Shown: positions 6,700 to 10,350, numbered from the stretch's first letter. The stretch: 64,000 nucleotides of DNA from Adineta vaga (GCA_021613535.1 CP075492.1:6200001-6264000), one strand, 5' to 3'. Notes: generated by a model not told the origin, from the sequence alone. A program made the numbers and translations.

Positions 6700-7602
6700 C
6701 TATGCGCAGTTGAATTGAAGTGAAATAGGAAAATGATCAGAAATATCACCAATTTCATCATGAACCAGGGCGGGCGACATTGCTAATTCATTCAATGACG
6801 CTGAAACGAGATAATGATCAATCCAGTGTTGTGTACGAATACCATTAGCATTCAAACCAACTCTTGTTGGCTTGTTAGTTGTTATGGAGCCTAACAGACC
6901 CGAAGATACTTTGCCATATGTGAATGCGCCAATCTTTTTCATAAATACGTTATATTTGCAATTCATATCACCGACTAATACAAAGAAACTATTATCGGCT
7001 GGCCACGAAATATTTTGTAATAGTGACATAGAAGCTTGGTCTTCAAACGGCACATGCGTATTGATAACACATAGACCGGATGAAGTTATCACAGTAAGTG
7101 CACCTTTCCCAGGATCAGCAGGACATGGCGTCCAATAAATTTGATCATTGGAAGAAGCACCAGTAGGATCGTAATGAATCGTGACGAGACTTTCATTTGG
7201 ATCATTATACAATGGTCCTTTGATTTGTCCTCGAACTTTCGGTATACGAGAATAAGTATTGAGATGAAACATTGGTTTATTAGACAAAGTAGAACCTACA
7301 TGTGAATTAAGCATCTGATTCAACAATGGCAACAAATCACCAGGTACTTCTTGCAAACAAATAAAACATTCCATTGAGCAATATTTTATTAATAAATCAT
7401 TCAATGTTTTTATAATATCGTTCAATCGCAATTTTTCATTCGACCAGTTTTCTTTAATTGCATATCGATTGATTACTGGACTCGAATCATACACATAATT
7501 TATTTCATGAATCATATGCAATACATTCCAACTAATAACAACAAAATTTTGTTGCATTTGTTTGTTTGTATGATTAACTTCTCCCGTTGAAAATGATGCC
7601 AT
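6700..7602 (-). CDS. Endonuclease/exonuclease/phosphatase (EEP) family hydrolase, intronless
   Basis: Motifs SWNV, CLQEV, NTH, GDMN, IDH, SDHFPI in the expected order. Confidence 0.85.
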   Translation of the reverse strand: MASFSTGEVNHTNKQMQQNFVVISWNVLHMIHEINYVYDSSPVINRYAIKENWSNEKLRLNDIIKTLNDLLIKYCSMECFICLQEVPGDLLPLLNQMLNSHVGSTLSNKPMFHLNTYSRIPKVRGQIKGPLYNDPNESLVTIHYDPTGASSNDQIYWTPCPADPGKGALTVITSSGLCVINTHVPFEDQASMSLLQNISWPADNSFFVLVGDMNCKYNVFMKKIGAFTYGKVSSGLLGSITTNKPTRVGLNANGIRTQHWIDHYLVSASLNELAMSPALVHDEIGDISDHFPISLQFNCA

Positions 7603-7893
7603 TGCAATTATGCAAAAGTCTGAAATTAATTAAAAGAATATTGTATAAATTGTGTTTAGAAGAAAAATATTGATAAATGACGGTATTTGAAACTTTATCT
7701 ATGTTGAATCATCGATGATAAAAGATGAAAAGATAAAATGGTATGTAATTTCTTTGATAATATTTATTGAACTCTTCTGTCTAATAAAAATATAATCAAG
7801 GGATTAGAAAGGAAATAGTTTGTTCATTTGTAGAAATTCTGTATCAATTCAGTATGTAGAAGACAATTATGTATTTGGTCTGTTTTGTGGATA

Positions 7894-9865
7894 TCAGTCA
7901 TGTATATATGTTTTCATATGTTCACGATCGGATCTCCTAGAGAGAAGAAATTTATTTTTTAATATGAAAAGCATTGATTCGATATTGAACATACTTTGCA
8001 CATCCATCACCGAAACGACATTTTTGTTTATCCGAACGAACAGTGCGACTCGTATCTTTCGAAGGATGAGAATACTGCTTACGATGATCGGTATCATTAC
8101 TTTAAGGAAGAAATATCGATATAAATAGAATTCTAATGACAACGTCAATGATTAAACATACTTATAACATTCAGCTCCATAGCGGCATTTTACTTTGCCT
8201 CCAACATCTTTTGGGTGTGAAAATTTTTGTAGGTGATCTGCATCCTTACTGAAAGAAAACAAAACATTAGACATCTACATGATCATATCATGCCAATCAA
8301 TGTCTACTGACCGAAAGCAGGATGAACCATAACGGCATTCTGATTTATCCGATTCATTACTTGTTCCACCTTTTGGACTTTGATAATCGGAATCACCAGG
8401 ATGTGCATATTCTTCATGATGATCAGCATCATGTCTAAAGACATTATTGATGATGAATAGTGGATGAAAATATTTCTCTAAATTACCTGGTACAAGATCG
8501 GCCATATCTACATGAACGACGTCCTCCGTCTATTGATACAAAAATTGAATGAAATGTCTGTTTTTTTTCTATACAATAATCTTGTCTCTTCACTTACATT
8601 GTGAACTCGATGATGAACCATCACTAGCCACATGTCCCGGTTTTGCAAGTTTTACTGAAAAATAGATAAAAAATATTCATATTTATTCTCAAGTTCTATG
8701 TTCAACTATACTTACATAAACCTTGACGAACATCATTTGGCACTCTCACATTACAAACATCATCAATTGGACCGAAATTTTCATGTAATGCTTGAAAAAG
8801 TTTACTGAATACAGGATGAGCTTTTAATTGTAATAATGTTGCTTTAGCGCTAGCTCGTTCCTCGGGGTTTTTCTTTAATAAAAGTTCAATAATCAATTTA
8901 TAACCACCAATATCTGGTATAACAACATCATCTGCATCAGGATCATTACAAAAATTCTCAAACTCATATATATCTTTCCAAGGTAAACCTCCGCAAAATA
9001 AGAGATAAAACATAACACCAGCTGCCCAAGCATCGGATTTTTTATGTAAATGTCGTGTAACAAGATTTTTTGAATTACGTTTTAAAAATTCCGGTGAAAC
9101 AAAGAATGGAGTAAAGCCTTTTGTCATGTCAACTGTATGTTGTGCAAGACGTGTATTCATTTTTTCTATTGTACCAAAATCAATTAATTTAATAGAGAAA
9201 TTCTTGTCATTTGGAACAATAACAAGATTTTGTGGTTTGATATCACCATGAATAATATTTATTTTTTCCAAGAATGCTAATGCTCGTAGAACATAGAGAA
9301 TAATAATCATTCCAACAATAGCAATTTCTTCTGCATCACCATCGGTAACTTTACTCACCCAAAATGTCGCAAGATCACATGCAGCAAGTTCCATAGCAAT
9401 AAAAATACCTTCTTTTGTTACTTTACTTCCGTAAAATTCAATAATTGGATGATTTACGATCTGAATTTGTTTCGTTAAACGCATGAAATTAACTTCATTC
9501 TTGATTTCTTGATCTAATGCTGGTGTATATTCCATGACTTTAATGGCAACAATTTGATTTTTATTTTTTACTTTGGCCTTATGAACTTCTCCAAAACCAC
9601 CACGATTAACAAACTCAACGAGTTCATAAATAACTCCTTCAATTTCAATTTCTTTTTTTTCTTTACGTATTACAGTTTCATTAGCTCCCGCTTTCAATGC
9701 AAGCATGAGAATCATTTTCGCCATTTGTTCTACATTTTCTTGCTGTTGTCGTTGACTTTCTTCTTGTTGTTCAGCAAAACGTTTCGCCATATCGGCATTT
9801 TGTTTCATTAACATTTTTTGTTGTTGTTCTAATTCGTTAATCTTTTTGGAACTATTGTTACCCAT
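7894..9865 (-). CDS. Ser/Thr protein kinase with predicted N-myristoylation site, coiled coil and four C-terminal PBZ (zf-CCHH) fingers, 7 exons
   Basis: Starts MGNNSSK. Kinase motifs RGGFGEV, AIK, HGDIKPQN, DFG, SPE. Exons 9865-8716, 8654-8598, 8529-8487, 8434-8312, 8248-8162, 8099-7995, 7936-7894 give CRYGRSCTRHDADHHEEYAH, CRYGSSCFRKDADHLQKFSH, CRYGAECYNNDTDHRKQYSH, CRFGDGCAKRSDREHMKTYIH. Confidence 0.88.
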
Positions 9866-10350
9866 GTTTTTAGACAAGTATTTCGAAAGAAAACTGACAA
9901 TATCAAATGAAATATAGTGTTGTCTGTATGCGTTTCTGCTCCTCTAATGTTATGTTGGTAAAAATAGAGACGCACAGAAAAATTCGCCGAAATATTCTCT
10001 CTCTTACCTATGTATTTATCGCAGCATAGCAGCATGTAGGATGCGTTGTTTTTCTCTCCAGTATAGCAAGGAAGAAAAAGAACTTGTGTGAAATTGAATC
10101 ACTTTTTTTTGTCGTGGTAGGAAGAAGAAAAAAGACGTTTTAACATTCCTGTAAACTACCTAGCAACCGACTTCAATTCGAGATAAGCAGAGTAACAAAA
10201 ATAAAAGATTAATTTCGAGAACTCAAAATCATGAAGATGGATGTGGATAAAAGTTTAGAAGAATGTCATGCTCGATTGAAAATTCTAATCGAGTCTAATT
10301 AAATAATAGCTGATATATATTTATTCACTATAAGTCAATAACATTAGCTT

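What the first reader, a model, noticed from the sequence alone, without database searches (positions are those of the whole stretch)
7894..9865. Predicted myristoylated kinase carrying four PAR-binding zinc fingers, hidden by splicing
Seen in sequence: after the kinase exon, six short exons splice in frame to give four CR(Y/F)GxxC-x6/7-H-x5-H units, and the protein starts MGNNSS (Gly2, Ser6). Established: this matches the PBZ/zf-CCHH motif that binds poly(ADP-ribose) in APLF and CHFR. Inference: a membrane-anchored kinase that reads ADP-ribose marks and converts them to phosphorylation. Single PBZ fingers occur on some kinases, but I do not recognise a myristoylated kinase with four from model animals. 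It is of particular interest in a probably desiccation- and radiation-resistant animal.
Basis: partly seen in the sequence, partly recalled or inferred. Interest (0 to 1): 0.85.

Follow-up and report, generated by a model that had tools for sequence, protein, structure and literature searches.

The report
Rotifer kinase with four ADP-ribose-reader fingers

Summary
On the minus strand, seven exons (9865-7894) with six GT..AG introns of 52-68 nt give a 535-aa protein. It is identical to the public model 'hypothetical protein I4U23_012650 [Adineta vaga]'. Spliced contigs from four studies carry all six junctions, and one contig spans the whole coding sequence.

- **Domains:** Pfam finds a kinase domain (5e-33) and PBZ/zf-CCHH (4.5e-22). 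Three fingers pass. The fourth has a Cys-x7-His spacing that is kept throughout the family.
- **Fingers:** Fingers 1-2 align to the solved tandem PBZ of human APLF, linker included. A phase-2 intron splits every finger at the same codon, so a six-frame Pfam scan of the genome misses them.
- **N-terminus:** MGxxxS(K) is kept in about 85 of the 100 closest homologues, and the genome encodes N-myristoyltransferase.
- **Kinase:** All catalytic residues are invariant. The domain is an orphan, nearest TTK/Mps1 and STE20 kinases at about 25% identity.
- **Family:** It is bdelloid-wide, with two ancient paralogues carrying 2-5 fingers.

This scan had already noted the paralogue at C3:13.84 Mb (s1-482572) with the same reading. 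PAR binding, lipidation, localisation and substrates are untested. Verdict: a new variant of a known kind (a PAR reader fused to an enzyme), of moderate to high interest.

The parts
7748..9997 (-). Transcribed unit as far as contigs show it. The 5' end reaches at least 9997; the poly(A) addition site is at about 7748.
   Evidence: X10 record 5 covers 7851-9997 spliced. An X6 contig ends at 7748 followed by a T-run (poly(A) on the minus strand). AATAAA lies 21 nt upstream of 7748.
9866..9997 (-). 5' UTR (132 nt seen) without any ATG. In-frame stops lie upstream of the start codon.
8716..9865 (-). Exon 1 (1150 nt, residues 1-383 plus 1 nt): start codon, myristoylation motif, long N-terminal helix, whole kinase domain
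9842..9865 (-). N-terminal MGNNSSKK: Gly2, Ser6, Lys7-8, a predicted N-myristoylation signal
   Evidence: One search gives the sequence. MGxxxS(K) is kept in about 85 of the 100 closest homologues. M1, G2 and S6 are at least 90% conserved. NMT genes are present in the genome.
9683..9853 (-). Residues 5-61: one long Q/E/K-rich helix, a possible coiled coil
   Evidence: AlphaFold2 helix 5-61 at pLDDT 55-68 (moderate confidence)
8837..9628 (-). Protein kinase domain, residues 80-343. K109, E124, H206-G-D208-I-K-P-x-N213, D229-F-G, P258-E259, D278 and R337 are invariant in the family.
   Evidence: Pkinase 5e-33; invariant columns; pLDDT 80-93; nearest TTK/Mps1 and STE20 kinases, about 25% identity
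8598..8654 (-). Exon 2 (57 nt): Ser-rich linker, residues 384-402, modelled as disordered
   Evidence: pLDDT below 50 at 389-404
8487..8529 (-). Exon 3 (43 nt): Cys half of finger 1
8312..8434 (-). Exon 4 (123 nt): His half of finger 1, the HPGDSDY linker, Cys half of finger 2
   Evidence: (half-finger hits to PF10283)
8162..8248 (-). Exon 5 (87 nt): His half of finger 2 and Cys half of finger 3
   Evidence: (PF10283 1.3e-06 from two half-fingers)
7995..8099 (-). Exon 6 (105 nt): His half of finger 3 and Cys half of finger 4
7894..7936 (-). Exon 7 (43 nt): His half of finger 4, one further residue, TGA stop
8401..8512 (-). PBZ finger 1 (residues 409-428, split by intron 8435-8486): C-x5-C-x6-H-x5-H, with T-R after the second Cys
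   Evidence: (aligns to APLF PBZ1)
8215..8337 (-). PBZ finger 2 (residues 450-469, split by intron 8249-8311): the most canonical finger, with F-R after the second Cys
   Evidence: best Pfam stretch, 447-472; aligns to APLF PBZ2
8066..8187 (-). PBZ finger 3 (residues 479-498, split by intron 8100-8161): Y-N after the second Cys, so the Arg is missing
7900..8020 (-). PBZ-like finger 4 (residues 514-534, split by intron 7937-7994): x7 Cys-His spacing, Phe in place of Tyr, at the very C-terminus. This form is conserved across the family.
   Evidence: the last finger of every member is x7 and terminal; same secondary-structure pattern as fingers 1-3, with one extra loop residue

Best explanation
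The region is an expressed seven-exon gene of Adineta vaga, already in NCBI as hypothetical protein I4U23_012650. The protein has four parts:
- a conserved N-terminal MGxxxSK signal for N-myristoylation;
- a long Q/E-rich helix;
- a catalytically intact, non-RD (HGD) Ser/Thr-type kinase domain of an orphan lineage;
- a Ser-rich linker followed by four PBZ-type zinc fingers, the first two forming an APLF-like tandem module.

The most likely mode of action is recruitment. The finger array binds poly(ADP-ribose) chains made by PARPs. This concentrates a kinase that needs no activation-loop priming next to ADP-ribosylated proteins, which it or its neighbours then phosphorylate. The lipid group either holds it at a membrane or acts as a switch.

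Shown: the gene model, transcription and splicing, domain homology, invariance of catalytic and zinc-ligand residues, and the family's spread in bdelloids. Unknown: compartment, substrates and stress regulation.
For: - **Gene model:** it equals public protein P0001.
- **Transcripts:** all six junctions appear in contigs of four studies, and one contig spans the full CDS.
- **Domains:** Pkinase 5e-33 and zf-CCHH 4.5e-22 with three passing stretches.
- **APLF likeness:** fingers 1-2 plus the HPGDSDY linker align to the solved tandem PBZ of human APLF at 2.6e-13. Tandem PBZs are reported to bind PAR about 1000 times better than single ones (PMC6264785).
- **Active kinase:** K109, E124, HGDIKPxN, DFG, PE, D278 and R337 are invariant across 36 family members, and the kinase fold is confident.
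- **N-terminus:** MGxxxS(K) is conserved in about 85 of the 100 closest homologues while residues 3-5 vary. The 35-38% identical sister family also has it, some members as MGC. NMT is present in the genome.
- **Age:** the family is monophyletic, with two clades each holding Adineta and Rotaria and each carrying PBZ arrays. The fusion therefore predates their split.
- **Finger constraint:** finger identities, including the terminal x7 finger, and intron positions are kept between the 54%-identical paralogues.
Against: - No biochemical datum exists for any member.
- Only finger 2 keeps both an aromatic residue and the Arg after the second Cys, the positions reported as ADP-ribose contacts in APLF (PMC6264785). 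Finger 1 has Thr-Arg, finger 3 Tyr-Asn and finger 4 Ala-Lys with altered spacing.
- A membrane anchor sits oddly with PBZ proteins, which are otherwise nuclear DNA-damage factors, and by eye I saw no clear nuclear localisation signal.
- No row combining kinase and PBZ Pfam domains appears in the stored parts of the published lists of desiccation- or radiation-induced genes. Those files are cut, so this is weak evidence.
- The sister family carries a different zinc finger in the same place, so the C-terminal module is exchangeable and need not define the core function.
Confidence: 0.55

Rival explanations
1. The kinase is a soluble or nuclear DNA-damage-response kinase. The myristoyl group is not a membrane anchor. 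It acts as an intramolecular latch or switch, as in c-Abl 1b (from general knowledge). The PBZ array brings the kinase to PAR at DNA breaks, where it takes part in damage signalling in an animal reported to lack H2AX.
For: PBZ domains are otherwise found on DNA-damage-response proteins, including bdelloid APLF, ligase E and PARG (PMC6264785, PMC10665377, PMC4245714), and on Dictyostelium Chk2 (PMC5087659). The tandem fingers 1-2 are APLF-like. A. vaga is reported to lack H2AX (PMC10665377). An HGD (non-RD) kinase fits regulation by recruitment rather than by activation-loop phosphorylation.
Against: The Lys-rich stretch after Ser6 (MGxxxSKxK) resembles myristate-plus-basic membrane signals, and some sister-family members have MGC, which points to dual acylation and membranes. 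I saw no obvious nuclear localisation signal. No kinase-plus-PBZ row was found in the stored lists of induced genes.
Confidence: 0.25
2. The fingers are PBZ by descent but no longer read PAR. They bind another ligand (nucleic acid, another nucleotide-containing mark, or a protein partner), or simply serve as a zinc-stabilised tail, while the kinase acts in an unrelated membrane pathway.
For: Three of the four fingers depart from the APLF contact set, and finger 4 has a different spacing. The sister family has an unrelated Cys/His finger at the same position. Finger number varies from 2 to 5 between members.
Against: The CxYG Tyr/Phe and all zinc ligands are conserved over paralogues of about 50% identity. 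Finger 2 keeps an aromatic residue plus Arg after the second Cys, and the tandem spacing and linker match APLF. PF10283 scores 78 bits.
Confidence: 0.15
3. The model is an annotation or assembly artefact. The real product is a kinase-only protein ending after exon 1, and the finger micro-exons are chance or decayed sequence.
For: Prokaryote-style gene calls on metagenome contigs give 385-400-aa kinase-only products. The first intron carries an in-frame stop four codons into it.
Against: Fully spliced contigs from four studies cover all six junctions and the stop at 7894. Reading frame, zinc ligands and intron positions are conserved in the paralogue and in other genera. The kinase-only products are explained by gene callers that cannot splice.
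Confidence: 0.02

Closest known systems
APLF tandem PBZ module (human; solved structures 2kqb-2kqe, 2kuo)
   Same: Fingers 1-2 align over both fingers and the HPGDSDY linker, with nearly the same spacing (E 2.6e-13). The spacing is C-x5-C-x6-H-x5-H with the CxYG core.
   Different: Pfam finds no FHA domain, and no Ku-binding motif or acidic histone-chaperone tail was seen by eye. There are four fingers instead of two. Each finger is split by an intron. The effector is a kinase rather than a scaffold.
Dictyostelium Chk2 carrying a PBZ domain (listed in PMC5087659, after Ahel et al. 2008)
   Same: A protein kinase carrying a PAR-binding zinc finger, that is a reader fused to a phospho-writer.
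   Different: This is a different kinase family. Pfam finds no FHA domain here, and the nearest solved kinases are TTK and STE20 types at about 25% identity. This protein has four fingers and an N-terminal lipidation signal, and it comes from an animal lineage. I did not fetch the Dictyostelium protein itself.
CHFR (PBZ plus RING E3 ligase) and RNF146/Iduna (WWE plus RING), from general knowledge
   Same: The logic is the same: a PAR reader domain fused to an enzyme that writes a second modification.
   Different: The second modification here would be phosphorylation, not ubiquitin. No allosteric activation by PAR is shown or implied.
Myristoylated kinases of the Src/Abl type, from general knowledge
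   Same: An N-terminal MGxxxS/T followed by basic residues, placed ahead of a kinase.
   Different: There are no SH3 or SH2 domains. The catalytic loop is of the Ser/Thr type (HGDIKPQN). Targeting would be by PBZ fingers.
Other bdelloid PBZ fusions: ligase E/K, four APLF copies, PARG with PBZ repeats (PMC6264785, PMC10665377, PMC4245714)
   Same: The same lineage habit of attaching PBZ fingers to enzymes. The genome holds at least 32 further intact PBZ units.
   Different: In those genes the fingers lie within single open frames. In the kinase family each finger is split by an intron. None of those papers mentions a kinase.
Paralogue I4U23_015279 at C3:13.84 Mb (P0081; scan note s1-482572)
   Same: 54% identical, with the same MG start, kinase, four fingers, terminal x7 finger and intron position within each finger.
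   Different: It has one intron fewer, because the linker and the first Cys half share one exon, and its linkers differ.

Membership tests
PBZ / zf-CCHH (PF10283) | Profile match above Pfam's gathering score | tested here: met
   78.1 bits against a cut-off of 22.7, E 4.5e-22, on P0001, which equals the spliced model. Single exons give only half-finger hits.
PBZ / zf-CCHH (PF10283) | C-x5-C-x6-H-x5-H ligand spacing | tested here: met
   Met by fingers 1-3. Finger 4 has x7 and does not pass Pfam on its own, but this form is conserved family-wide.
PBZ / zf-CCHH (PF10283) | ADP-ribose contact residues as in APLF: the Tyr of CxYG, then an aromatic residue and Arg after the second Cys (PMC6264785) | tested here: inconclusive
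   The CxYG Tyr is present in fingers 1-3 and is Phe in finger 4. Aromatic plus Arg occurs only in finger 2 (F-R). Finger 1 has T-R, finger 3 Y-N and finger 4 A-K.
PBZ / zf-CCHH (PF10283) | Binds zinc and poly(ADP-ribose) | not testable with these tools
   Needs recombinant protein.
Active eukaryotic protein kinase (PF00069) | Catalytic residues: VAIK Lys, alpha-C Glu, HxD...N, DFG, APE-like motif, subdomain XI Arg | tested here: met
   K109, E124, H206/D208/K210/N213, D229-F230(-G231), P258-E259 and R337 are invariant in 36 sequences. Pkinase 5e-33. The fold is confident.
N-myristoylated proteins | Initiator Met followed by Gly2, a small residue (Ser/Thr) at position 6, and NMT in the organism | tested here: met
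   MGNNSSKK is the first AUG of the transcript. The motif is conserved. NMT loci lie at C4:12.69 Mb and C1:17.51 Mb.
N-myristoylated proteins | Lipid actually attached | not testable with these tools
   No predictor or mass-spectrometry data were at hand.
APLF | N-terminal FHA domain, Ku-binding motif, C-terminal acidic histone-binding region | tested here: not met
   Pfam shows only kinase and PBZ families. The protein ends one residue after finger 4.
Chk2-type checkpoint kinase | FHA domain and CAMK-group Chk2 kinase domain | tested here: not met
   No FHA hit. The best solved matches are MINK1, TNIK, TTK and CDPK at E about 1e-19, not Chk2.
TTK/Mps1 | Orthology-level similarity of the kinase domain | tested here: not met
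   Only 24-26% identity and E about 1e-19 by sequence; TM-score about 0.8 on the target. This is generic kinase similarity.

The most novel reading that the evidence does not exclude
Bdelloid rotifers run a PAR-to-phosphorylation relay that other animals lack. A lineage-specific, lipid-switchable kinase is recruited through a four-finger PBZ array to PARP products. It provides damage or stress signalling in an animal reported to lack H2AX, or it reads cytoplasmic or membrane-proximal PAR during desiccation. The wider kinase family would have an older tie to PAR metabolism, hinted at by two sister-family genes that lie beside PARG.
Probability: 0.15. Interest if true: 0.85.

Novelty: new variant of a known kind. 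Interest (0 to 1): 0.6.

Why it matters
PAR readers fused to enzymes, such as CHFR and RNF146, show how one modification triggers another. A direct PAR-reader kinase has been reported only as a single-finger Chk2 in Dictyostelium.

Bdelloids survive massive DNA breakage, over-express PARPs and PBZ-bearing repair enzymes after irradiation, and are reported to lack H2AX. A conserved kinase with a high-avidity PBZ array is therefore a concrete, testable candidate for how ADP-ribosylation is turned into phospho-signalling in these animals.

The finding also carries a practical lesson. Introns split the fingers, so six-frame domain scans and several public gene models miss them.

Tried and rejected
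- **Single-exon Pfam search.** Each exon holds two half-fingers. Two exons stay below the cut-off and one passes only by adding two halves, so this cannot count fingers.
- **Joined model.** I joined the exons only inside a script, to test equality with P0001 and to list the short finger motifs. All whole-protein searches used the public protein P0001.
- **Published expression data.** I tried to map the gene to the FUN_ identifiers of PMC10809525, assuming the same numbering as the I4U23_ tags. FUN_012664 is a cullin, and no cullin lies in the window; the nearest is 0.88 Mb away. I rejected the mapping. A search of the stored, cut supplements for rows with both kinase and PBZ Pfam domains found none.
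- **Intermediate hits of the exhaustive HMMER search.** I checked those with several matched stretches (P0127-P0139) for kinase plus PBZ. They are multi-kinase proteins without PBZ.
- **PBZ-region word search.** It returned only four close relatives, so it says nothing about kinase-plus-PBZ architectures elsewhere.
- **Run labels.** No run is labelled RNA. I infer their RNA nature from the intron-less contigs and the poly(A) tail. Contigs give no expression level and cannot exclude rare isoforms.
- **Taxon of the sister family.** All hits are unnamed metagenome proteins.

Full report
**Observation**

The finding lies on the minus strand. Reading the three minus-strand frames of 7700-8800 and locating the junction sequences, I derived seven exons independently: 9865-8716, 8654-8598, 8529-8487, 8434-8312, 8248-8162, 8099-7995 and 7936-7894. 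The six introns are 61, 68, 52, 63, 62 and 58 nt. All are GT..AG and have 21-33% G+C. The sum is 1608 nt, that is 535 codons plus TGA.

**Handling of the spliced model**

I searched the exons by reference. For whole-protein work I used a public protein returned by the database search (P0001). Inside a script I joined the exons once, only to test equality with P0001 and to list the short finger motifs. The two are identical. P0001 is NCBI 'hypothetical protein I4U23_012650 [Adineta vaga]', so the organism is the bdelloid rotifer Adineta vaga and the gene model is already public.

**Transcription and splicing**

None of the runs that hold the stretch is labelled RNA. When four of them, from four studies, are laid on 7600-10200, they give contigs that skip exactly the six introns, with CT..AC ends on the + strand. 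One contig of 1783 nt (X10) runs spliced from 7851 to 9997, covering the entire CDS. An X6 contig ends at 7748 followed by a T-run, which is a poly(A) tail on the minus strand, 21 nt after an AATAAA. The 132 nt of 5' UTR seen hold no ATG, and in-frame stops lie upstream, so MGNNSS is the first AUG. No contig seen ends after the kinase exon. Contigs cannot rule out rare isoforms and give no expression level.

**Domains**

Pfam on P0001 gives Pkinase at residues 80-343 (5.4e-33) and zf-CCHH/PBZ at 4.5e-22 (78 bits against a cut-off of 22.7), with three stretches passing. The four units start at C409, C450, C479 and C514. The first three have C-x5-C-x6-H-x5-H spacing; the fourth has x7 between the second Cys and the first His.

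Against solved structures, residues 396-469 align to the tandem PBZ of human APLF over both fingers and the linker (HPGDSDY in both), at E 2.6e-13. The AlphaFold2 model built on a 36-sequence family alignment gives all four fingers the same strand, short-helix, helix, strand pattern, with finger 4 carrying one extra loop residue. It gives a confident kinase fold (pLDDT 80-93), one long helix over residues 5-61 (pLDDT 55-68) and a disordered Ser-rich linker at 389-404.

The residues reported as ADP-ribose contacts in APLF are the Tyr of CxYG and the aromatic residue plus Arg after the second Cys (PMC6264785). They are only partly kept. The CxYG Tyr is present in fingers 1-3 and is Phe in finger 4. 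After the second Cys, finger 1 has T-R, finger 2 F-R, finger 3 Y-N and finger 4 A-K.

**Introns and fingers**

Each finger is interrupted by a phase-2 intron in the codon two residues after its second Cys. Every internal exon therefore carries the His half of one finger, a linker and the Cys half of the next. The paralogue has introns at the same place in each of its four fingers. This fits an array that grew by duplication of that exon unit before the paralogues split.

The splitting also explains three things:
- A six-frame Pfam scan of the whole genome finds 32 intact PBZ units elsewhere, but none at this gene or its paralogue.
- Metagenome gene calls of this family stop at about 388 aa.
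- Some public bdelloid models lose fingers. P0017, for example, ends by reading into the last intron.

**Kinase**

K109, E124, H206-G-D-I-K-P-x-N213, D229-F-(G), P258-E259, D278 and R337 are invariant in 36 members. The enzyme should therefore be active. The HGD motif makes it a non-RD kinase, and HGDIKPQN is the Ser/Thr type of catalytic loop.

The nearest solved kinases are MINK1/TNIK/MAP4K4, TTK/Mps1 and CDPKs at only E about 1e-19. By fold the nearest is TTK, at 24-26% identity. An exhaustive HMMER pass over 1.84 billion representatives finds only 16 proteins below 1e-30. The listed hits down to about 1e-33 are family members or fragments of them, except a few multi-kinase proteins that score by summing several kinase domains and carry no PBZ. 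So the kinase is an orphan lineage.

**N-terminus**

Of the 100 closest homologues, about 85 start MGxxxS, mostly followed by K, while residues 3-5 vary. M1, G2 and S6 are at least 90% conserved in the alignment. The exceptions are mostly N-terminally truncated or mis-started models. The genome has N-myristoyltransferase at two loci. This is the classical signal for N-myristoylation with a basic patch. Attachment itself is not shown.

**Family**

The haploid assembly holds two copies, both on contig C3: this gene, and one at 13.84 Mb that is 54% identical (P0081, I4U23_015279). A maximum-likelihood tree puts all bdelloid sequences in one clade (100/100). Within it are two well-supported subclades, each holding Adineta and Rotaria species and each carrying members with 4-5 fingers. 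The kinase-PBZ fusion and the duplication therefore predate the split of those genera.

Finger number ranges from 2 to 5 in the models that look complete. The last finger is always the x7 type and ends the protein within 0-1 residues. The ESM Atlas cluster of this protein has 64 members, all Rotifera where the phylum is known, and 83% carry zf-CCHH. This scan had already noted the paralogue with the same reading (s1-482572).

**Sister family**

Unnamed metagenome proteins 35-38% identical to P0001 share the MGxxxS start (some MGC), the Q/E-rich helix and the entry into the kinase. They end in two or three copies of a different Cys/His finger, not PBZ. Their contigs are AT-rich, and the neighbouring genes are split by short introns. 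The lipid-signal, helix and kinase core is thus older than the PBZ array, and the C-terminal finger module is exchangeable.

Two of these genes, 61% identical to each other, each lie just downstream of a PARG gene on the same strand. A third does not. I record this as an unexplained hint, not as evidence.

**Literature**

PBZ fingers in A. vaga are described on ligase K/E, on four APLF copies and on PARG (PMC6264785, PMC10665377, PMC4245714). None of these papers mentions a kinase. Searches combining PBZ, zf-CCHH or 'PAR-binding zinc finger' with bdelloid, rotifer or kinase found nothing further. Dictyostelium Chk2 is listed among PBZ proteins (PMC5087659), so a kinase with PBZ has one precedent outside animals. 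The main text of the desiccation and irradiation transcriptome paper mentions no kinase or PBZ. Its stored, cut supplements hold no row combining kinase and PBZ domains. Its gene identifiers could not be mapped to this locus.

**Mechanism**

The best-supported reading is recruitment. An avid PBZ array, with an APLF-like tandem plus two divergent fingers, tethers a constitutively competent kinase to poly(ADP-ribose). The N-terminal lipid sets where the kinase waits, or acts as a switch.

- **Shown:** the gene, its transcript, its domains, and the conservation of catalytic, zinc-ligand and lipidation-signal residues.
- **Inferred:** lipidation, PAR binding and the coupling of the two.
- **Unknown:** compartment, substrates and regulation.

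The main rival differs only in place: a soluble or nuclear DNA-damage kinase with a myristoyl switch. A second rival holds that the fingers have drifted to another ligand. The artefact reading is excluded by the transcripts and the conservation.

**Verdict**

The protein is not a member of APLF, Chk2 or TTK. It is a member of the PBZ-containing proteins and of the active protein kinases. I rate it a new variant of a known kind, of moderate to high interest. Two things reduce that interest: the gene model is already public, and this scan had already reported the paralogue.

Noticed in passing
L003:2919-4190 and L005:4557-5831 (metagenome contigs); proteins P0133, P0135, P0140, P0157, P0184, P0284, P0285, P0290: A sister family, 35-38% identical, from an unnamed AT-rich eukaryote with introns. 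It has the same MGxxxS start (some MGC), the same Q/E-rich helix and the same kinase. It ends in 2-3 copies of a different Cys/His finger instead of PBZ. The taxon is unknown.
   Followed up: partly
L003:625-2529 and L005:2537-3846: In two contigs whose kinases are 61% identical, the sister-family kinase lies directly downstream of an intron-split PARG gene on the same strand. A third contig (P0290) has no PARG. This may be plain synteny or a link between this kinase family and PAR metabolism.
   Followed up: partly
window:6700-7602 (-): An intronless 300-aa ORF starts 146 nt downstream of the kinase's poly(A) site. It has a weak, sub-threshold match to the endonuclease/exonuclease/phosphatase fold (PF14529, E 0.0014).
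   Followed up: partly
window:10351-10911 (-): An ORF fragment with a sub-threshold ABC-2 transporter membrane-domain hit (PF01061, 3.9e-05, 23.7 bits against a cut-off of 26.9). It is probably one exon of a neighbouring ABC transporter gene upstream of the kinase.
   Followed up: no
P0017 (Adineta steineri), P0014, P0018, P0019 and other public bdelloid models: Several annotated orthologues lack one or more fingers. P0017 ends by reading into the last intron, so public gene models under-count the fingers of this family.
   Followed up: partly
G000, 32 places listed (e.g. C1:8652638, C6:9377817, C4:3757456, C3:7058427): The A. vaga haploid genome holds at least 32 intact PBZ units outside the kinase family, often in pairs. 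PBZ is therefore widely spread over genes in this animal, as reported for Dictyostelium.
   Followed up: no
window:9214-9265: Contigs of runs X1 and X5 match only this 52-nt piece of the kinase exon and run on into unlike sequence on both sides (table 7). They probably come from a paralogue or another kinase that shares the catalytic-loop region.
   Followed up: no
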